From positions 186,001 through 250,000 of the IMG/VR virus record IMGVR_UViG_3300027969_000039: a stretch of DNA of 64,000 bases, one strand, 5' to 3'. A model generated the notes under the pieces. The model saw only the letters and a list, made by a program, of their open reading frames with translations, was not told the DNA's origin and did not search any database. Made by a program: the position numbers and the translations under genes. Positions 32,240 through 40,699 of the stretch are shown in pieces (positions within the stretch are counted from its first letter, which is position 1; the number at the start of each line of letters is the position of its first letter).

Positions 32240-33822
32240 TACCAAAAACCTCCATCGGATGGTAGTTGACTACCTCTTAGTAGTCTTCCTGTTGAATAAT
32301 CTCTAAGACTAAAATTATTACTTACATCATTTCTCGTAACAATAGGAACTGCTGTTATCGATATTTGTATTTTTGTAGGGACATAAGTAGGTTCTTGTAC
32401 TCTATATGCTCCCGAAAATTGAGGTGGCGCAACAGTTGCTCCTGATTGTAATCCAGCATTTTGAATTCTACTATTGCTCCTTGATGATGTTGCACCTGAT
32501 TTAGGTTGTTCTTGTGTAGAACCTGCTCTAATATAATCCACTTCTGTTGGCAATGAGTATGTAAAATTAGTTATTGCAAGTGGGTGATTATCAAATTGAA
32601 ATGCACCTAATCCTGTAAGATAACATAATGGTGGAGGTGTACCTGGAACTGGACCCGGATCTTGACCGTAAAACATTTTTGTCACGGATCTAAAAAAGTG
32701 AATGACTGCTAATAAGTAATTAGCTTCAAAAACATCTTGTGCTGTAAAGTCACAACTTAGTGTAATTTGATCAACCGAACTACTATTATAAGTATAAAAT
32801 TTATAATTTGTATGTGTTAATGTAGTAGGATCATACTGTGCTGCATATGCAACTGAAATAGCAGGAGTATAGGGAAATATAACCCCGTTAGTTGTTGCCA
32901 ATGGACTTAATATACCGGGCTCAGATGACTTATATAAATAATCCGCACCACTTGCTAAACTTAATCGTACACGCCAATCTTCTTTGCTGTTAAAGTTTGA
33001 TATATCTTGATTTGTCGCTTCTTCTCGTGTATTTTGTTCTGCGGCAGATGTCCCTCTATAAGTATTATTATTTTCAGCAGCAGCAGCTTCAATTCTAGCA
33101 TCTTCACGGGCTTCATTTTCACGGGTGATTCTTAATCTTGCTTGGTCATCAGTTTCTTCGGCTTGTTTTTGTGGTTGTATCACTGCGTTCGGTGCTGGTG
33201 CTGCTTCAATCGTAGTTATTGGCGCAGGTGCTGCGTTTTCTACTACAGGGGCAGCAACCGGCGTCTCTGCCACAGCAGTAACTGCTGCCGGTACTGCATT
33301 TTCTACAACCGGCGTAACTGCGACTGCAGGTTCTGCTGGATTGCTAGTAGGAAGAACTTGAGCAGGGGTTGCAGCTTGTACTGGTTCGCCTGCTGAATTA
33401 GTTGAAGGTTGTTTTGCTGGATTTTCAATAGCACCTGCTTGCTTTAAATTGTTTATTCCATCATTGGTTTCAGCAACAACCGCGGCTTGTTTTGCTGCTG
33501 CTGCTTCAGCTTCACCTTTAGCAATTAATGCATCGGCTCGTTGATTATCAAGTGCCACTGCTTGGGCTTTTGCTGCATCTCTTTCTGCTTGACTAAGTGT
33601 GGGGTCTGCTGCTTTCTCTTTAGCAGCATTTACTTGTTGTCGAGTTGGCGCTTGTGCTAACGCTTGAGTTGCTGATTCTACTGCGGCATTTTTTTCAGCT
33701 AGCTTACTTTCTTGTATTGTTGATAATTGTTGAGACCAAGCTAAAGCCGAATCTTTAGACGAAGGCGGCATAGTAGCAACATAACTGCTACTAGCTAAAT
33801 TATTCGGGGTATAAAATGGCAT
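32239..33822 (-). CDS. Baseplate/tail-tube initiator-like protein (gp48/gp54-like) with Ala/Pro/Glu-rich N-terminal extension
   Basis: C-terminal half GVIFPYTPAI...HTNY...ITLSCDFT...PPPLCYLTGLG...ITNFTYSLP is tube-fold-like; first gene of the baseplate operon. Confidence 0.6.
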   Translation of the reverse strand: MPFYTPNNLASSSYVATMPPSSKDSALAWSQQLSTIQESKLAEKNAAVESATQALAQAPTRQQVNAAKEKAADPTLSQAERDAAKAQAVALDNQRADALIAKGEAEAAAAKQAAVVAETNDGINNLKQAGAIENPAKQPSTNSAGEPVQAATPAQVLPTSNPAEPAVAVTPVVENAVPAAVTAVAETPVAAPVVENAAPAPITTIEAAPAPNAVIQPQKQAEETDDQARLRITRENEAREDARIEAAAAENNNTYRGTSAAEQNTREEATNQDISNFNSKEDWRVRLSLASGADYLYKSSEPGILSPLATTNGVIFPYTPAISVAYAAQYDPTTLTHTNYKFYTYNSSSVDQITLSCDFTAQDVFEANYLLAVIHFFRSVTKMFYGQDPGPVPGTPPPLCYLTGLGAFQFDNHPLAITNFTYSLPTEVDYIRAGSTQEQPKSGATSSRSNSRIQNAGLQSGATVAPPQFSGAYRVQEPTYVPTKIQISITAVPIVTRNDVSNNFSLRDYSTGRLLRGSQLPSDGGFW

Positions 33823-33843
33823 GTTGTTCTTATCCTTATATAC

Positions 33844-33858
33844 TATTTAGCATAAATA
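33844..33858. promoter_or_regulatory. Back-to-back late promoters (minus CTAAATA at 33844-33850; plus ATAAATA at 33852-33858)
   Basis: TATTTAG-C-ATAAATA at the divergence point between the baseplate operon and gp55. Confidence 0.55.
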
Positions 33859-33894
33859 TAATACGCTATTTTTACCGTTTCTGCTAAAAATATG

Positions 33895-33923
33895 TTGCAT
33901 TTCTGCAACTATTATGCTATAAT
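33895..33923 (+). promoter_or_regulatory. sigma70-type promoter for gp55
   Basis: TTGCAT, 17-bp spacer, TATAAT with extended -10 TG; AAGGAG Shine-Dalgarno before the ATG at 33954. Confidence 0.75.
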
Positions 33924-33953
33924 CAGTCAAGCATAATCAAATCAAGGAGAACT

Positions 33954-34865
33954 ATGTCATTACCCTCAAGAAAACCTGTCAACTATTTAAACAACAAAGA
34001 TATACTAAAAGAGATACACGAAAGTAAAAACGCATATTGTCATTTTGCCAAACCAGAATATCATAGATACGATTTTATAGTAGATATGCCCCAATCTTCA
34101 ATTGAGGATAGTTTAGAATATGCATTTAAACCAGAATCTATTCAACAAGCAAAAGAAACTAGGGCTACTAGGTTAGGGATAGAAGCAGGAGCAAAAGATT
34201 CAGTTGACCCAGAATCTATTCTAGTGACAGATTTAGTATTTAGAGTAATGAATTGGGATCATGTCCCAGTAGCCCCAAAAGTTCCCCGTAAAACAGTTAA
34301 AAAGAAAACCGCAAAGGATATCTTTGAATTTGAAGAAGTTGATCCAGATGAGATTTTTGCAGATTTAGAAGATGTGACGACCAAAGCAGAAGTAGATGAC
34401 ATGGTACATGTCAAAGTTAACTTTCCACCATTCCAACATTATATGATCGACAAGAACAATACATTCTATTGCGTAGGCAAAAGTCATTGGAAAGGTGATC
34501 TAGAGTCTGGGGAATTCAGCAAAGATCATGGACAGGTCACAAACAAACTAGCCCGTATGTATATTATGATGTGCGAAAAATATGCTATGAAGTATAATTG
34601 GCGTGGGTACACATACAATGATGAGATGCGTAATTCAGCTATTCTTCAACTTACATATGTTGGATTACGATTCAACGAAGCCAAAAGTGCTAACCCATTC
34701 GCATACTATACCGCAGCAATTACAAATAGTTTCTGTCGTGTACTGAATACGGAAAAGCGTAATCAAAATATACGTGACGATATCTTAGAGATTAATGGAC
34801 TTAACCCAAGCTGGACTCGTCAAGGGCTGGGTGCTGGTATGAGTTCAGTGGTGTACGAAGAATAA
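33954..34865 (+). CDS. gp55: Late-transcription sigma factor, T4 gp55-like
   Basis: NYLNNKDILKEI N-terminus; NWRGYTYNDEM...FNEAKSANPFAYYT...F.R....EK; adjacent to gp47/gp46 as in T4-like phages. Confidence 0.9.
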   Translation: MSLPSRKPVNYLNNKDILKEIHESKNAYCHFAKPEYHRYDFIVDMPQSSIEDSLEYAFKPESIQQAKETRATRLGIEAGAKDSVDPESILVTDLVFRVMNWDHVPVAPKVPRKTVKKKTAKDIFEFEEVDPDEIFADLEDVTTKAEVDDMVHVKVNFPPFQHYMIDKNNTFYCVGKSHWKGDLESGEFSKDHGQVTNKLARMYIMMCEKYAMKYNWRGYTYNDEMRNSAILQLTYVGLRFNEAKSANPFAYYTAAITNSFCRVLNTEKRNQNIRDDILEINGLNPSWTRQGLGAGMSSVVYEE

Positions 34866-34870
34866 TTTTA

Positions 34871-34908
34871 CCAATGTGATTGATTTCACATTGGCTTTAC
34901 TATACAAT
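34871..34908 (+). promoter_or_regulatory. sigma70-type promoter (TTGATT-17-TACAAT) overlapped by a 9-bp inverted repeat with TGTGA-N6-TCACA core
   Basis: CCAATGTGA-TTGATT-TCACATTGG at 34871-34894; TACAAT at 34903-34908. Confidence 0.55.
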
Positions 34909-34914
34909 AACTAG

Positions 34915-35928
34915 ATGAGTAACCTTTTTAAAAAAGCCGCGGTGTTTACTGACATTCACTTTGGCCTTAAGTCAAATAGCCTGCAACATAATCAAGACTG
35001 CAATAATTTTGTAGATTGGTTCATAAAGAAAGCAAAGAGTGAGGGATGTGAAACGTGTTTCTTCTTGGGTGATTACAATCATCACAGAGCAAGTATCAAC
35101 ATTCATACACTACAGTTTGGATTACAAGCACTGGAGAAACTAAATGATAACTTTGATAGGGTATATTTTATACCGGGCAATCACGATCTTTATTATCGTG
35201 ACCGCAGGGACATTCATAGTGTTGAGTGGGCTAAACATTTACCAAACGTACAAATCGTCAATGACTTCTTCAGCCAAGGAGATGTAGTCATTGCACCCTG
35301 GCTTGTACAGGATGATTACAAGAAGGTACAAAAACTAAGTGGGAAATACTTGTTTGGTCATTTTGAATTACCACGATTCTATATGAATGCTATGGTAGAG
35401 ATGCCCGATCATGGTGAGATCAATACTGACCACATGAAAAGTTTTGATAAAGTATTCAGTGGGCATTTTCATAAACGACAAAGCCGTGCTAATGTGTGGT
35501 ACATTGGCAATGCCTTCCCACATAACTATGCTGATGCAGGGGACGATGCTAGAGGCATGATGATATTAGAATGGGGACAAGACCCAGTCTTTCATAGCTG
35601 GCCTCGTCAACCATTGTTCCGTGTCTATAAGTTAAGTGATGTGCTTGAAAACCCAGAGGGTTTGCTATTGATTGATAGTCATGTTAGAGTACATCTTGAT
35701 ATTGATATTTCATACGAAGAAGCTAATTTCATCCGTGAAACATTAATTCCAGAACATAAACTAAGGGAGATGGCGTTGATACCAATGAAAGTAGACCAAG
35801 TTGAACAAGAGGGTCGTGGTGACTTGAAGTTTGAATCAGTAGACCAGATCATCATCGACCAGATCAATAGCATTGAGAGCAATAGCTTTGATAAAAAGAT
35901 ATTGTTGGACATCTATAACAATCTATGA
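34915..35928 (+). CDS. gp47: Recombination nuclease, Mre11/SbcD-like (gp47)
   Basis: Metallophosphoesterase motifs DIHFG, LGD, GNHD, GHF, SGHFH. Confidence 0.93.
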   Translation: MSNLFKKAAVFTDIHFGLKSNSLQHNQDCNNFVDWFIKKAKSEGCETCFFLGDYNHHRASINIHTLQFGLQALEKLNDNFDRVYFIPGNHDLYYRDRRDIHSVEWAKHLPNVQIVNDFFSQGDVVIAPWLVQDDYKKVQKLSGKYLFGHFELPRFYMNAMVEMPDHGEINTDHMKSFDKVFSGHFHKRQSRANVWYIGNAFPHNYADAGDDARGMMILEWGQDPVFHSWPRQPLFRVYKLSDVLENPEGLLLIDSHVRVHLDIDISYEEANFIRETLIPEHKLREMALIPMKVDQVEQEGRGDLKFESVDQIIIDQINSIESNSFDKKILLDIYNNL

Positions 35929-36146
35929 TAGAACCAAAAGAATACAGAGATTTAGAATCATTGATGAAGGTTAACAAACATTTGGGTATAGCATTATCTG
36001 AATTGACTAATACACATTCTTATGTTGGTGTTTTGACTGAGCAAAGACGGTTGATCAAAGTCAAACTTAGACTGGAAACCATAATAGAACAAACATTAAA
36101 AGCTGAAAAAATAGCTAAAGATAAGTTTTTTAGAAAATTAAAATGA
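35925..36146 (+). CDS. Hypothetical helical protein, 73 aa
   Basis: ATGA overlaps with both gp47 and gp46. Confidence 0.7.
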   Translation: MIEPKEYRDLESLMKVNKHLGIALSELTNTHSYVGVLTEQRRLIKVKLRLETIIEQTLKAEKIAKDKFFRKLK

Positions 36147-37906
36147 TAGTATTAAAAAATATAACATTACGGAACTTTTTAAGCATTGGTCAAGTAACAC
36201 AAGCAGTAAACTTTGACAGACAAGAACTAACACTTATCCTAGGTGAGAACTTAGACTTAGGTGGTGATGGGGCTCGTAATGGTACTGGTAAGACTACATT
36301 GATCCAAGGGTTATCCTATGCATTGTTTGGTGTACCTATCAATAGCATTCGTAAAGATAATCTAGTCAATCGTACTAATGCTAAAAACATGATGGTAACA
36401 TTAGAGTTTAGTGTTGAGGGTATTGAGTATAAGATTGAGCGTGGTCGTAAGCCAAATGTGTTACGATTCTATGTTAATAATTCATTGCAAAAAGGAATGG
36501 ATGACGCACAAGGTGAGAACAAAGAAACACAAGCTGCGATTGAAAAGGTTATACACATGAGCGCCGATATGTTCAAGCATATCGTAGCATTGAACACTTA
36601 TTCCGAACCATTTCTAGCACTTAAAAATAACGAACAGCGTGATATCATTGAACAATTGTTAGGCATTACGCTATTGTCTGAGAAGGCTGAAGTCATCAAA
36701 GGTATGCTGAAAGATACCAAAGATAATATACAACAAGAAGAATTCAATGTAAAAGCAATTGAAGAAGCCAATAAGCGTGTTAAAGAACAGATTGATGCTA
36801 CAAAGCGTAGACAGAAGTTGTGGAAAATGAAACATGATGAGGATTTAGAGCGTCTTGCTATTGATTATCAACGGTTGATTACTATTGATATTGCTGCGGA
36901 GTTACAGGCTCACAAAGATTTAACTACATATAATGAAAAGCGCAAGTCTATTGATGACCTTAACAAGCTGATTGCTCGTTGTGTAGCTGATGAAGCTAAA
37001 GAATCAAAAATAGTCAACAAACTAACGAAAGAAATTGATGATTTAAAAAATCACACTTGTTATGCTTGTGGACAAGAGTTTCACGATACAAAACATGAAA
37101 ATGTATTGGCAGAGAAGCAAAACGCATTACAAGAAGCCGGGGCACAGGTTTTAGCTACTAATAATCAACAACTAGAATATTCTCAATCATTAAAAGAATT
37201 GGGTGTATTGGGTACTATGCCTGTAACACATTATGATACAGAAGCACAGGCTATTAAACACAACAGCCAACTTGAAAATTTGATTACTCAAATTGAGAAC
37301 AAGACGGTTGAGGTTGATCCATACGGTGAGCAGATAATTGAGATGGAAAACAAAGCATTACAAGAGATTAACTTTGATAAGATTAACAAGTTGACACGTA
37401 CTATGGAACATCAGAAGTTCTTGCTTGACTTATTGACTAGCAAAGATAGCTTTGTTCGTAAAAAGATTATTGACCAGAATCTATCATACTTGAATGGTAG
37501 ACTGACGCATTACTTAGACAAGATTGGATTGCCGCATAATGTAATATTCAAAAACGATTTACAAGTTGAGATTACAGAATTGGGTCGTGAACTTGATTTT
37601 GATAACTTGAGTCGTGGCGAACGCAATAGATTGATTCTAGGATTGAGTTTTGCGTTTAGAGATGTTTGGGAGAACTTGTATAGCCCAATCAATACATTGT
37701 TTATTGATGAATTGATTGATAGTGGACTAGACACAATGGGGGTTGAAAACGCTATTGCTATTCTTAAAGACATGAGCCGTCGTAGAAAGAAGTCTATTTG
37801 GCTTGTCAGTCATAGAGAAGAATTAGCTGGTCGTGTTCCAAATGTGTTGAAAGTTATAAAGGAAGCAGGGTTTACATCATATTCTTCGGCAACTGATATT
37901 AATTAA
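36143..37906 (+). CDS. gp46: Recombination ATPase, Rad50/SbcC-like (gp46)
   Basis: NFLS; Walker A NGTGKT; coiled coil with CYAC zinc hook; LSRGE signature; Walker B LFIDE; SH. Confidence 0.95.
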   Translation: MIVLKNITLRNFLSIGQVTQAVNFDRQELTLILGENLDLGGDGARNGTGKTTLIQGLSYALFGVPINSIRKDNLVNRTNAKNMMVTLEFSVEGIEYKIERGRKPNVLRFYVNNSLQKGMDDAQGENKETQAAIEKVIHMSADMFKHIVALNTYSEPFLALKNNEQRDIIEQLLGITLLSEKAEVIKGMLKDTKDNIQQEEFNVKAIEEANKRVKEQIDATKRRQKLWKMKHDEDLERLAIDYQRLITIDIAAELQAHKDLTTYNEKRKSIDDLNKLIARCVADEAKESKIVNKLTKEIDDLKNHTCYACGQEFHDTKHENVLAEKQNALQEAGAQVLATNNQQLEYSQSLKELGVLGTMPVTHYDTEAQAIKHNSQLENLITQIENKTVEVDPYGEQIIEMENKALQEINFDKINKLTRTMEHQKFLLDLLTSKDSFVRKKIIDQNLSYLNGRLTHYLDKIGLPHNVIFKNDLQVEITELGRELDFDNLSRGERNRLILGLSFAFRDVWENLYSPINTLFIDELIDSGLDTMGVENAIAILKDMSRRRKKSIWLVSHREELAGRVPNVLKVIKEAGFTSYSSATDIN

Positions 37907-37953: not shown

Positions 37954-38604
37954 ATGTTTATCAAAAACGAATCTTATATTAGATATTATGAAATTATAAC
38001 TCAAGCAAATAATATATGCCCGCGCACTATAAAAAAGTCTGAAGCTATGGAAATCAGAGGATACATTGAAGACCACCATATCATTCCTAAATGTTTGGGA
38101 GGACAAGATATTATTTCTAATAAAGTATGGTTGACTGCCGAAGAACATTTTATGTGTCATAAACTCCTAACTGAAATGACAGTAGATAATGCTAACGGTA
38201 AAATGTGGAGTGCATTATGGCGTATGATGAATAAACAAAGTAAAAATCAAGGACGAGATTATATTATTGATGCCAAAGAGTATGCAACAGCGAGAGAACA
38301 AAATGCAAAAAATCATAGCATCAGAATGAAAGGTGAACTAAATCCATTTTATAAAAAAACACACACTGATTCTACTAAAGAAGCAATGTCTGTTAGTAAG
38401 AAGGGCAAAACTTATGAAGAAATATTTGGAAAAGATAAAGCCGACGAGATGAGAGATCGCAGAAGAAGTGAAAGTTTAGGTAAACTAAAGGGCCCACAAC
38501 TAAAATCTACATGTCCACATTGTGGTGTTGACGGTGGGTTTGGTATAATGAAACGATGGCACTTTGAGAATTGTAAATTTTTAGGTAACGTTAAAACATC
38601 ATAA
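37954..38604 (+). mobile_element. Free-standing HNH homing endonuclease with NUMOD3-like DNA-binding motif and C-terminal Cys/His motif
   Basis: EDHHIIPKCLGG...NKVWLTAEEHFMCHKLL (HNH); GELNPFYKKTHTDSTKEAMS (NUMOD3-like); CPHC...RWHFENCK. Confidence 0.85.
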
Positions 38605-38606
38605 GT

Positions 38607-39164
38607 ATGATTATGTCAAGTCCACAGAAAAACAAAGGTTCAGGTTTCGAAAGAGAAATCGCTAAATATCTATCCGATACTTACGGCGAAAGTTTTATTC
38701 GTGCCCCAGGGTCTGGAGCATATGTGGGCGGGAAGAATCAACATAGAACACAAATATTACATGAGGGGCAAGTTCGTTCATTTAAGGGCGATATTGTACC
38801 TGGACAATCATTCAGTAGAATGAATGTTGAGTGTAAGTTTTATGCAGATTTTCCGTTTCATTTGATACTTACTGGAGAGTGTAAAGTATTAGATGGTTGG
38901 CTAACGCAACTAATGGATGTTGCTGATCCAGACGATGTGAATATTCTTTTTCTGAAGTTTAATCGTAAAGGTCGCTATGTTTGTGTACAAAGCAAACTAA
39001 CATGGGTTGCGGACAATTTCACTTATTACACCTCTCAAAAACACGGAGACTGGATGATTTTCGAATTTGATAGTTTCTTCTTACATAATATACCAATATT
39101 AAAATCATATTGTTCAACAGACACCAAGTCAAATCAAAGTTCCATATTAACTATTAATGTTTAA
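38607..39164 (+). CDS. Holliday junction resolvase-like PD-(D/E)XK nuclease (Hjc type); true start possibly 38613
   Basis: KNKGSGFEREIA...RAPGSGA...GDI...NVECK; located in the recombination cluster. Confidence 0.8.
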   Translation: MIMSSPQKNKGSGFEREIAKYLSDTYGESFIRAPGSGAYVGGKNQHRTQILHEGQVRSFKGDIVPGQSFSRMNVECKFYADFPFHLILTGECKVLDGWLTQLMDVADPDDVNILFLKFNRKGRYVCVQSKLTWVADNFTYYTSQKHGDWMIFEFDSFFLHNIPILKSYCSTDTKSNQSSILTINV

Positions 39165-39169
39165 AAATT

Positions 39170-39530
39170 TGTTGGCTCAGTTGTGAGTCCTCCTTGAGTT
39201 TGTACAGATTGTGCTGTGCTGACGGATCTGGAGTATGCTTATCAGTAATGATAAGGAAAACCGAGAAGGCTCTCGTCAAAGCGAACCTTCAATGAGTCTA
39301 TATCCAACTCTATCTTGCGGATATAGAACATGCGTTGTCGAAGAATCAATTGAAAGACATTGGTAGCTTCACTACAGTCCCAAAAACACTACAGGACAAC
39401 CGGTTGCGTATAATGTCAGAAATAGGCAATTATACGGGGAACAGATGGCAAAGGATGACGGGCATGGCAAGTTTCCATTGGTAGTGCAAATTTGCACTAC
39501 CATGGCTCTCTAAGCGGCAATATATATCCG
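39170..39530 (+). ncRNA. Candidate large structured non-coding RNA (family unknown)
   Basis: No ORF of 60 aa or more; visibly more G+C-rich than other intergenic DNA; at least seven stems, including a GNRA-capped hairpin and nested helices. Strand inferred from the GTAA tetraloop and G-U pairs. Confidence 0.5.
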
Positions 39531-39653: not shown

Positions 39654-39890
39654 TTAGAAGAATGGCATCTGTGTTTTCTTAGTAGTTTCTAAATTATCTT
39701 CTACTATCCTGCCAATGGCTTCTCTTTCATTCGGGGACATGTTAAGTATATCTTCATATGTTACCCCTCCCCGCATGTACCAAGAAAACTTTAACGAAGA
39801 TTCTTTTATACTAAAGGCTTCTTTTTCCAGATCATCTAATAATTTTTGTATCTGCTCGTTGTTCAGAGAAAGAAGCCTTAATCGAAAAAA
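39654..39890 (-). CDS. -1 frame extension of the tail/baseplate assembly chaperone (gp51/gpGT-like); missing from ORF track
   Basis: Open from the slippery run to TAA at 39654: FFRLRLLSLNNEQIQKLLDDLEKEAFSIKESSLKFSWYMRGGVTYEDILNMSPNEREAIGRIVEDNLETTKKTQMPFF*. An in-frame TGA lies immediately upstream and the first ATG is mid-domain. Confidence 0.7.
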   Translation of the reverse strand, partial: FFRLRLLSLNNEQIQKLLDDLEKEAFSIKESSLKFSWYMRGGVTYEDILNMSPNEREAIGRIVEDNLETTKKTQMPFF

Positions 39891-40699
39891 TCAGTTACAT
39901 TTAATGTTAATGTTTGTGTGTATTCATGTGAGCAATTTACACATTGTATTTTTTGTGGTTTAATATTTGAATCGGATCTTAGATTTACCATAGTAGTACG
40001 AATCTTTTCAAATGTACTTCTATCACATGAAGATAAGAATTCAATAATAAATTTAGGATCAGTTACTGTTTCTCCAGGAACACTTATAGATTCTATAGTC
40101 ATAGATATCAAGTTCATATTAAGTGTAGATAGTTTTTTCATTATCTCGCCGGATTTAGTATTTCGTAAATTATCATCTTGCATTTCTTGCAAAACTGAAA
40201 TTTCTCTTTGTGCTTCAAACTGTGCTAAGTTAAGTTTGTTACTATCATTATATGTAATTGGTTTAAATTTGATTATTAAATCACCAATTGGAAAAGTATT
40301 ACCATAATCAACATTTTTAATGCTTTGTAGTAAACCACCTAGATTAATAGCGTAGGATCCTTCATTTTCACATTCTGGACAATTTGATTTTATTTCTAAT
40401 TCATTTCCATTAGTTGCTGAACGAATAGCAATCAATATAGCGTCTATGTCTATATTTGGCATTTTCCATGGATCTTTGATTGCAGGAATACAGCTTTTTA
40501 TAATCTCAACGACCGCGCTACCGTTAAATAATGCGTCTGGAGTTTTACTAGTAATTTCATCAATAGCAGTCATGGGGTAAACAGGAAGTTCACCACTTTC
40601 AGGCATGTCGATGGATCCCTCAGGGTAATATTGCCCTTTACTAGGTAGTGTAAGATACAATGCAGGTCTGCGGAAATACTGTTTTAAGGGGTTGTTCAT
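39878..40699 (-). CDS. gp26: Baseplate hub assembly/tail chaperone, T4 gp26/gp51 family
   Basis: LYLTLPSKG...VYPMTAIDE...DIDAILIAIRSAT...CPEC...CVNC...DFF end; GGAG Shine-Dalgarno; divergent from the tape measure gene. Confidence 0.75.
   Translation of the reverse strand: MNNPLKQYFRRPALYLTLPSKGQYYPEGSIDMPESGELPVYPMTAIDEITSKTPDALFNGSAVVEIIKSCIPAIKDPWKMPNIDIDAILIAIRSATNGNELEIKSNCPECENEGSYAINLGGLLQSIKNVDYGNTFPIGDLIIKFKPITYNDSNKLNLAQFEAQREISVLQEMQDDNLRNTKSGEIMKKLSTLNMNLISMTIESISVPGETVTDPKFIIEFLSSCDRSTFEKIRTTMVNLRSDSNIKPQKIQCVNCSHEYTQTLTLNVTDFFD

What the first reader, a model, noticed from the sequence alone, without database searches (positions are those of the whole stretch)
34871..34917. CRP-like palindrome framing the -35 box of an apparently leaderless gp47-gp46 transcript
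Seen: CAATGTGA-TTGATT-TCACATTG matches the TGTGA-N6-TCACA core exactly. Its 6-bp spacer is a -35 hexamer lying 17 bp from TACAAT. The expected start site falls at about the A of the gp47 ATG (34915), and there is no Shine-Dalgarno. Established: TGTGA-N6-TCACA is the CRP-family consensus, and binding over -35 represses. Inference: recombination-dependent replication genes could be gated by a host CRP-family regulator, so that the phage senses host nutrient or second-messenger state.
Basis: partly seen in the sequence, partly recalled or inferred. Interest (0 to 1): 0.6.

Follow-up and report, generated by a model that had tools for sequence, protein, structure and literature searches.

The report
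Hairpin inside a leaderless-gene promoter
The "CRP site" is one sequence version of a stem-loop that related phages keep by base pairing only, but it lies inside a conserved host-type promoter placed so that the recombination-nuclease mRNA should begin exactly at its ATG, a layout this jumbo-phage group also uses for other DNA-replication genes.

Summary
The sequence is as described: a perfect 9-bp/6-nt-loop palindrome (34871-34894) starts 5 nt after the gp55-like sigma gene's stop codon. Its loop TTGATT lies 17 bp from TACAAT, the gp47 (SbcD/Mre11) ATG follows 6 nt later, and there is no Shine-Dalgarno.

In 29 related phage contigs a hairpin sits at the same place with different arms: 95% of cells paired against 76% in shuffles, and 40 against 11 compensatory cells. 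TGTGA/TCACA occurs only in the window's nearest kin. The 303-kb genome has 2 exact cores against 1 for the control pattern, and no CRP-type HTH was found.

The promoter is what is conserved. TTG sits at -35, TAnAAT at -12 to -7 and CCA at about -44. In 55 of 67 distinct relatives the -10 lies exactly 6 nt from the ATG, and only 5 have an SD-like word.

The same layout recurs, and is conserved, upstream of primase, a 5'-3' exonuclease and a Pol III alpha fragment. Most other genes have leaders with an AAGGAG-type SD. PA5oct, RaK2 and Atu_ph07 do not share the layout.

Best reading: a structure-selected 3' stem-loop of the gp55 message (weak terminator or stabiliser) embedded in a sigma-70-type promoter for a leaderless gp47-gp46 operon. 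No transcript data were obtainable.

The parts
33894..33923 (+). Promoter of the gp55-like gene: TTGCAT (33895-33900), 17 bp, TATAAT (33918-33923), with the palindrome GTTGCA-tttc-TGCAAC (33894-33909) over the -35. It is followed by a leader of about 24 nt with an AAGGAG SD before ATG 33954.
   Evidence: sequence; conserved in relatives, palindrome positions covary. Context only; its role is unexplained.
33954..34865 (+). gp55-like late sigma factor gene (303 aa), SD-led; stop TAA at 34863-34865.
   Evidence: (phrog_12791 E 7e-73).
34871..34894 (+). Stem-loop: 9-bp perfect arms, 6-nt loop, -13.1 kcal/mol as RNA. It contains the CRP-like core at 34875-34890. It spans -44 to -21 of the gp47 promoter and begins 5 nt after the gp55 stop.
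   Evidence: Covariation in 29 relatives.
34871..34873 (+). CCA box at about -44, 6 nt upstream of the -35 TTG. It is conserved whether or not a hairpin is present.
34880..34885 (+). -35 hexamer TTGATT (the hairpin loop in this phage).
   Evidence: TTG conserved in relatives.
34903..34908 (+). -10 hexamer TACAAT, 17 bp from the -35 and 6 nt from the ATG.
   Evidence: T, A, A, T columns at 1.1-1.4 bits; 55 of 67 at exactly 6 nt.
34915..35928 (+). gp47 (SbcD/Mre11-type nuclease, 337 aa). The A of its ATG (34915) is the predicted transcription start, so the mRNA is leaderless.
   Evidence: The start is fixed by the in-frame TAG before it and by the D-I-H phosphoesterase motif at residues 12-14.
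35925..36146 (+). 73-aa ORF that overlaps the gp47 stop and the gp46 start (ATGA overlaps). It is an insertion absent from most relatives.
   Evidence: (joint 35930 to 36158).
36143..37906 (+). gp46 (SbcC/Rad50-type ATPase, 587 aa), translationally coupled in the same operon.

Best explanation
The palindrome is not a CRP operator. It is a stem-loop selected for base pairing. It most likely forms in the 3' end of the gp55 message, transcribed from gp55's own promoter, as a weak intrinsic terminator and/or a 3' protective hairpin. It has been squeezed into the 49-nt gap so that it overlaps the -35/spacer of the next promoter.

That promoter (CCA at -44, TTGATT, 17 bp, TACAAT) is read by the host sigma-70-type holoenzyme and starts at the A of the gp47 ATG. 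The result is a leaderless gp47-orf73-gp46 mRNA whose first cistron is initiated without an SD; the following cistrons are coupled through ATGA overlaps.

The same layout (promoter, 6 nt, ATG) drives other replication genes of this phage clade.

Shown: the sequence anatomy, covariation of the stem, conservation of the promoter and its spacing to the ATG, lack of SD, and recurrence at other genes. Inferred: the transcription start, termination or stabilisation by the hairpin, and 70S-type leaderless initiation.
For: Hairpin:
- 29 relatives each fold on their own to 7-11 bp stems (mostly 8-11) at the same place with different arms.
- On alignment A1, 95.4% of cells pair against 76.1% in shuffles (0 of 500 reach it). 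There are 40 double-sided changes against 11.1 (0 of 500). Slid registers give 31-75%.
- There are 23 G.U pairs on the + strand.
- It ranks 15th of 328 gene 3' ends for stability. Strong hairpins are enriched after stop codons (19 against 7 mid-gene at -12 kcal/mol or lower).
- It is the first-listed + strand terminator-like site in an 8-kb scan.

Promoter and leaderless start:
- The logo of 67 distinct upstream regions shows TTG at -35, TAnAAT at -12 to -7 and CC at -44/-43. The best -10 is exactly 6 nt from the ATG in 55 of 67, and an SD-like word occurs in 5 of 67.
- The promoter persists where the upstream context differs (L019, L023, L030).
- Four loci in which an inserted gene displaces the promoter have an AAGGA SD and an ATGA overlap instead.
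- gp55 next door has AAGGAG.
- Genome-wide, strong promoter-like sites followed by ATG peak at 6 nt: 8 against 0-3 at other distances, and 12 against 1-6 when an ORF is required.
- The same spacing is conserved upstream of primase (44 of 47, no SD-like word), the 5'-3' exonuclease (35 of 57) and the Pol III alpha piece (all 19).
- A -10 motif 6-7 bp from the ORF is the experimentally validated signature of leaderless genes in Deinococcus (PMC12340547).
- Lambda cI from pRM is a leaderless phage mRNA (bioRxiv 10.1101/2023.09.02.556006).
Against: - No transcript 5' or 3' end could be examined. The only runs found are DNA-like contigs of relatives.
- The tail after the stem is only moderately T-rich (CTTTACTA). 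The criterion of 5 T in 8 is met in 11 of 29 relatives, and the tail overlaps the A/T-rich -10 region. The clear terminators of this genome have GC-rich stems and clean T runs.
- More distant relatives keep the promoter but have no hairpin, so the hairpin is dispensable.
- The G.U excess mostly involves the fixed TTG, so it follows partly from transitions opposite T and G.
- A similar covarying palindrome over the -35 of the gp55 promoter has no co-directional upstream gene, which leaves room for a DNA-level role.
- The host is unknown, so the efficiency of leaderless translation there is unknown.
Confidence: 0.6

Rival explanations
1. Host CRP-family operator: a cAMP- or second-messenger-bound dimer binds TGTGA-N6-TCACA centred at -32.5 and represses the gp47-gp46 promoter.
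For: The core is exact and the flanks (AATGTGA / TCACATT) also fit the E. coli-type consensus (the consensus is from my own knowledge). An exact core is expected only 0.10 times per window. The position over the -35 would repress.
Against: The half-sites are not conserved. They are present only in the window, L003, L005 and L006, and broken in L009. L004, with an identical gp47 protein, and 23 other relatives have other arms that still pair. There is no regulon: 2 sites in 303 kb against 1 for the control pattern, and from its sequence context the second looks to lie in coding sequence, though I listed no ORFs there. No CRP-type HTH is encoded by the phage. The host is unknown.
Confidence: 0.04
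2. DNA-level element: the inverted repeat over the -35 is an operator for a phage-encoded dimeric regulator, or a supercoiling-dependent cruciform, that times the promoter.
For: The stem always fills the space between the CCA box and the -10 (-44 to -18). A second covarying palindrome covers the -35 of the gp55 promoter, where no upstream co-directional RNA is expected. In this genome the Pol III alpha piece and a 62-aa ORF also have short palindromes over their -35.
Against: Arms, loop length (3-6 nt) and register vary freely among near relatives, which no single protein specificity would tolerate. G.U pairs would be A-C mismatches on the other strand. The palindrome at the Pol III alpha promoter is not conserved in relatives. 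Distant relatives lack the gp47 hairpin.
Confidence: 0.12
3. No internal promoter: gp47 is translated from the gp55-gp47 read-through mRNA by SD-independent initiation or 70S scanning and re-initiation. The TTG/TAnAAT conservation would then reflect something else, for example A/U-rich enhancer sequence.
For: The tail of the hairpin is a poor U-tract, so read-through is likely. A 9/12 promoter match alone is at chance level. RaK2 and PA5oct express gp47 by coupling or an SD just after gp55.
Against: This does not explain three things. TTG is invariant at a 17-18 bp spacing. The gap is fixed at 6 nt in four unrelated genes. The motif persists when the upstream gene is different (L019, L023, L030). 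It also does not explain the perfect TTGACA-17-TATAAT-6-ATG sites elsewhere in the genome.
Confidence: 0.08

Closest known systems
Leaderless mRNAs made by a promoter that abuts the start codon (lambda cI from pRM; the '-10 motif 6-7 bp before the ORF' class of Deinococcus-Thermus; mycobacterial leaderless genes)
   Same: A -10 hexamer lies 6 nt before an ATG, there is no SD, and the predicted 5' end is at the A of the AUG (PMC12340547; bioRxiv 10.1101/2023.09.02.556006).
   Different: Here it is a minority class within a lytic jumbo phage whose other genes have leaders of about 30 nt with AAGGAG-type SDs. It is concentrated on replication and recombination genes and carries a full -35 plus a conserved CCA at -44. 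The start site has not been mapped.
PeSLs, the composite promoter-early/stem-loop cassettes of T4-type phages (PMC2839356, PMC4122927)
   Same: An intergenic stem-loop proposed to terminate or attenuate upstream transcription sits directly beside a sigma-70-like promoter in a T4-related genome.
   Different: PeSL stem-loops lie upstream of an AT-rich tract and the promoter, often have GGGG/CCCC stems, are repeated many times and flank ORFans. This hairpin overlaps the -35 and spacer, is single-copy, lies between core genes and precedes a leaderless gene.
CRP/Vfr/Clp-type operators (TGTGA-N6-TCACA)
   Same: Exact core and good flanks; the position over the -35 is typical of repression.
   Different: It is not conserved in orthologous promoters, there is no regulon in the genome, and pairing rather than sequence is what is kept.
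T4 middle promoters (MotA box at -30 plus a sigma-70 -10) that serve replication and recombination genes (geometry and gene class from my own knowledge)
   Same: A distinct promoter class in front of replication and recombination genes. The -35 region often reads TTGCTT, like the core of the MotA box (primase promoter).
   Different: The spacing fits a normal 17-bp sigma-70 promoter, not the roughly 12-bp MotA-box geometry. No MotA domain was found, though the search control was silent. T4 middle transcripts have leaders.

Membership tests
CRP-family operator | Match to TGTGA-N6-TCACA | tested here: met
   Exact at 34875-34890.
CRP-family operator | Half-site sequence, not mere pairing, conserved at the orthologous promoter | tested here: not met
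   Only the window, L003, L005 and L006 keep it. The other 24 of the 29 aligned sequences (L009 degenerate among them) have other arms that still pair.
CRP-family operator | Further sites in the genome above chance (a regulon) | tested here: not met
   2 exact cores in 303 kb against 1 for the reversed control. With up to 1 mismatch, 1 in the window against 3.6 expected.
CRP-family operator | Bound by a CRP-family protein, with an effect that depends on the effector | not testable with these tools
   The host is unknown. The phage encodes no HTH_Crp_2 domain.
Sigma-70-type promoter | -35 and -10 hexamers with 17 +/- 1 bp between them | tested here: met
   TTGATT, 17 bp, TACAAT: 9 of 12.
Sigma-70-type promoter | Elements conserved at orthologous sites | tested here: met
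   Logo of 67 distinct relatives. PA5oct-type phages rely on host RNAP and have TTGAC/TATAATA promoters (PMC7318152).
Sigma-70-type promoter | Mapped transcription start | not testable with these tools
   No RNA run holds the phage.
Leaderless gene | -10 element 6-7 nt upstream of the start codon | tested here: met
   6 nt in the window. The best -10 is at 6 nt in 55 of 67 relatives and at 5-7 nt in 65 of 67.
Leaderless gene | No Shine-Dalgarno, although the genome uses one elsewhere | tested here: met
   5 of 67 relatives have an SD-like word. gp55 and the repeated early cassettes have AAGGAG.
Leaderless gene | Unambiguous start codon | tested here: met
   In-frame TAG directly upstream; the D-I-H motif at residues 12-14 leaves no later start.
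Leaderless gene | mRNA 5' end at the A of the AUG, translated as such | not testable with these tools
   Needs 5' mapping and toeprinting.
Intrinsic terminator | Stable stem-loop just 3' of a gene on its strand | tested here: met
   9 bp, 4 G-C pairs, -13.1 kcal/mol, starting 5 nt after the stop.
Intrinsic terminator | U-tract directly after the stem | tested here: inconclusive
   CTTTACTA in the window. At least 5 T in 8 in 11 of 29 relatives. The tail is confounded with the -10 region.
PeSL cassette | Many near-identical copies that flank ORFans | tested here: not met
   Single copy between core genes. The genome's repeated early-promoter cassette (about 20 copies) is a different sequence without this hairpin.

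The most novel reading that the evidence does not exclude
This freshwater jumbo-phage clade has a dedicated promoter class (ACCA box at -44, TTGATT/TTGCTT -35, often a TGn-extended -10) that makes leaderless mRNAs for its replication and recombination genes: SbcD-SbcC, primase, 5'-3' exonuclease and a Pol III alpha piece. The box would be read by a phage-encoded activator. SD-independent initiation would let these messages be translated selectively once the phage has altered or shut down SD-dependent initiation. That would be a translational counterpart of T4's middle mode, and it is absent from the cultured relatives PA5oct, RaK2 and Atu_ph07.
Probability: 0.2. Interest if true: 0.65.

Novelty: new member of a known kind. 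Interest (0 to 1): 0.4.

Why it matters
A striking match to a transcription-factor consensus can come from a structure-selected hairpin, and comparison with relatives settles it. The positive result is that a clade of uncultured freshwater jumbo phages appears to express its recombination nuclease and several replication genes from leaderless mRNAs. The promoter-to-ATG spacing is held over wide divergence, while neighbouring genes and the cultured relatives use Shine-Dalgarno leaders. If confirmed, this gives a sequence-only marker for a temporal or translational gene class in phages that cannot yet be grown. It also corrects start-site and operon annotation, and it offers a compact promoter that needs no ribosome-binding site.

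Tried and rejected
- Near-identity DNA search of the phage collection: no match. The nearest cultured relatives are only 45-51% identical in gp47.
- Expression evidence: the single run search returned four runs labelled RNA-Seq that behave as DNA contigs of 90-95% relatives. They show no starts or ends and say nothing about the TSS.
- Rfam scan of 33700-35300: one sub-threshold chance hit, unrelated.
- Pfam searches of the phage genome for CRP-type HTH, MotA and RegB: none found. The MotA and RegB controls did not ring, so those two blanks are uninformative.
- Host inference: no tRNA in the window. A DnaJ scan of bacterial genomes found only a 3.5-kb contig binned with a Chitinophagaceae MAG. 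This is probably a mis-binned phage contig and is at odds with the phage's TTGACA/TATAAT and AAGGAG signals.
- A loose genome-wide pattern for the ACC box plus promoter: 33 against about 22 in shuffles, not convincing. CC at the right offset is not enriched among all TTG..TAnnnT matches.
- The idea that a hairpin over the -35 is a general feature of the leaderless class: rejected. The Pol III alpha hairpin is not conserved, and I saw no obvious stem in the primase and exonuclease upstream regions, which I did not fold.
- A minus-strand terminator role for the gp47 hairpin: the minus-strand tail is not T-rich (my reading).

Full report
What is there. The window is bases 186001-250000 of a 303-kb IMG/VR phage record with 37% G+C. 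Its gp47 protein is 50% identical to that of Pseudomonas jumbo phage PA5oct and 45-47% to RaK2-like phages and Atu_ph07. Around the finding, a long minus-strand block of structural genes ends at 33822. A plus-strand cluster follows:
- a gp55-like late sigma factor (33954-34865);
- gp47, SbcD/Mre11 (34915-35928);
- a 73-aa ORF (35925-36146);
- gp46, SbcC/Rad50 (36143-37906);
- a homing endonuclease;
- a RusA-like resolvase.

It holds a perfect palindrome with 9-bp arms and a 6-nt loop at 34871-34894. The loop TTGATT lies 17 bp from TACAAT, and 6 nt later comes the ATG, with an in-frame TAG just before it. There is no Shine-Dalgarno word.

Is the CRP match more than chance? Only weakly. An exact TGTGA-N6-TCACA core is expected 0.10 times per window, and 8 of 100 shuffles contain one. 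With one mismatch allowed the window has fewer hits than expected, 1 against 3.6. The whole genome has two exact cores against one for a reversed control pattern. From its sequence context the second core looks to lie inside coding sequence, though I listed no ORFs there. The phage encodes no CRP-type HTH domain.

A scan of IMG/VR with gp47 returned 80 related loci at 77-100% protein identity, and I read the region upstream of the ATG in all of them. TGTGA/TCACA is present only in the window's nearest kin (L003, L005, L006) and is damaged in L009. L004 has an identical gp47 protein and about 95% identical flanking DNA, yet its arms are quite different.

Even so, 29 relatives each fold on their own to a 7-11 bp stem (mostly 8-11) at the same place, at -6 to -17 kcal/mol. 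On the alignment, 95.4% of cells form standard pairs against 76.1% in column shuffles (0 of 500 reach the observed value). Forty cells carry changes on both sides against 11.1 in shuffles (0 of 500). Sliding the partner by 1-3 columns drops pairing to 31-75%. Selection therefore acts on pairing, not on the CRP half-sites.

What the hairpin probably is. It begins 5 nt after the gp55 stop and ranks 15th of 328 gene 3' ends in the genome for stability. Strong hairpins are enriched after stop codons, 19 against 7 mid-gene at -12 kcal/mol or lower. A consensus scan lists it first among the terminator-like sites. Twenty-three G.U pairs lie on the plus strand.

Against a clean terminator:
- The tail CTTTACTA is only moderately T-rich.
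- The criterion of 5 T in 8 holds in 11 of 29 relatives.
- The tail is confounded with the A/T-rich -10 region.
- More distant relatives (gp47 below about 83% identity) have no hairpin at all.

I therefore read it as an accessory 3' stem-loop of the gp55 message, acting as a weak terminator and/or a stabiliser and packed into the next promoter. Membership in the intrinsic-terminator class remains inconclusive. The closest described arrangement is the PeSL promoter/stem-loop composite of T4-type phages (PMC2839356, PMC4122927). This element differs in that it is single-copy, lies between core genes and overlaps the -35.

The promoter and the leaderless start. A 9/12 hexamer match alone is at chance level. 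Conservation is what counts. In 67 distinct upstream regions anchored on the ATG, the informative columns are TTG at -35, T-A-n-A-n-T at -12 to -7, and CC at -44/-43. The best -10 hexamer lies exactly 6 nt from the ATG in 55 of 67 regions and within 5-7 nt in 65 of 67. Only 5 have an SD-like word.

The motif persists where the upstream gene is different (L019, L023, L030). In four loci a 253-aa GIY-YIG-like ORF has been inserted between gp55 and gp47. There the promoter is gone, and gp47 has an AAGGA SD and an ATGA overlap instead. gp55, 1 kb upstream, has its own TTGCAT-17-TATAAT promoter, a leader of about 24 nt and an AAGGAG SD.

A -10 element 6-7 bp before the ORF is the experimentally validated signature of leaderless genes in Deinococcus (PMC12340547). 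Lambda cI from pRM is the classic leaderless phage message (bioRxiv 10.1101/2023.09.02.556006). The start at 34915 is still an inference. The only sequencing runs found were DNA-like contigs of relatives.

Beyond the finding. The genome holds about 20 copies of a near-identical perfect early promoter, TTGACA-17-TATAAT with a conserved spacer. Each is followed by a leader of 27-34 nt with an AAAGGAG-type SD in front of a small ORF. So SD-led expression is the norm here.

A separate class stands out. Among strong promoter-like sites followed by ATG, the distance distribution peaks sharply at 6 nt: 8 against 0-3 at other distances, and 12 against 1-6 when an ORF of at least 50 codons is required. 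The genes behind these sites are:
- gp47;
- a DNA primase;
- a 5'-3' exonuclease (FEN/RNase H type);
- a fragment with a Pol III alpha domain;
- a DnaJ homologue;
- an AbrB/MazE-like 62-aa ORF;
- four ORFs without a known function (one matches an unannotated PHROG).

IMG/VR orthologue sets show the same conserved spacing. For primase it holds in 44 of 47 distinct regions, with no SD-like word. For the exonuclease it holds in 35 of 57. For the Pol III alpha piece it holds in all 19. CCA at -44/-45 is present in 42 of 44 primase promoters and in most gp47 and Pol III alpha promoters.

The cultured relatives do not share the layout. PA5oct has AAGGA six nt before a GTG. In RaK2, gp47 overlaps gp55. 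Atu_ph07 has AAAGG. PhiKZ transcript mapping found no leaderless transcripts (PMC8244752).

Verdict. The CRP interpretation is not supported. The promoter and leaderless interpretation is supported by strong comparative evidence but remains unmapped. The hairpin is a structure-selected element, most likely acting in RNA. The element is a new member of known kinds: a leaderless gene, and a terminator/promoter composite. The more novel possibility is a dedicated leaderless promoter class with an upstream ACCA box for the replication and recombination genes. It is open and testable.

Noticed in passing
G000:C1, minus strand, clusters at about 29.0-32.0 kb, 57.8-58.5 kb, 140.8-141.5 kb and 156.5-156.8 kb (all outside the window): About 20 near-identical copies of a perfect TTGACA-17-TATAAT promoter with a conserved spacer (core AAATGGTTTTGGGTA), a conserved leader of about 30 nt and an AAAGGAG-type SD, each before a small ORF of 53-155 aa. 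This is a repeated early-promoter cassette reminiscent of PeSL-type mobile regulatory cassettes.
   Followed up: partly
window 33894-33909: The palindrome GTTGCA-tttc-TGCAAC overlaps the -35 of the gp55 promoter. It is kept in distant relatives, with covarying positions. The upstream gene is divergent, so it cannot be a plus-strand 3' hairpin. The A-run before it gives a T-run after the stem on the minus strand, so it may be a minus-strand terminator or insulator in front of the late structural block.
   Followed up: partly
window 34871-34873 and the equivalent sites at G000:C1 about 19.5 kb, 116.7 kb and 123.5 kb: A conserved CCA (often ACCA or TTTACC) lies 6-7 nt upstream of the -35 TTG in the promoters of gp47, primase, the Pol III alpha piece and many exonuclease and gp55 orthologues. 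Its function is unknown.
   Followed up: partly
window 35925-36146: A 73-aa ORF with no family match is wedged between gp47 and gp46 with ATGA overlaps at both ends. It is absent from most relatives: contigs join 35930 to 36158 with 9 other letters between, and identity collapses there in L004, L009, L011 and L014.
   Followed up: partly
L028:2240-3001 (also L010, L012, L048): A 253-aa ORF whose N-terminus looks GIY-YIG-like by eye (no family scan was run) is inserted between gp55 and gp47 in four relatives. It is preceded by a 12-bp-arm hairpin. gp47 there has an AAGGA SD and an ATGA overlap instead of the leaderless promoter.
   Followed up: partly
window 37954-38604 and 38607-39164: A homing endonuclease (phrog_655) and a RusA-like resolvase lie directly downstream of gp46 in the same orientation.
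   Followed up: no
window 39479-39502: A perfect palindrome of 24 nt lies between the end of the plus-strand cluster (39164) and a convergent minus-strand gene (39878-40699). It is probably a bidirectional terminator.
   Followed up: no
L255 (CANFGZ010000235.1, a 3.5-kb contig of a Chitinophagaceae MAG): It encodes a DnaJ 80% identical to the phage's DnaJ (G000:C1:110258-111061). This is most likely a phage contig binned with a bacterial MAG and is weak as a host clue.
   Followed up: no
G000:C1:116150-116659 (minus strand): A 169-aa ORF carries only part of a Pol III alpha domain (PF07733) and has its own leaderless-type promoter. This suggests that the polymerase is encoded in pieces.
   Followed up: no
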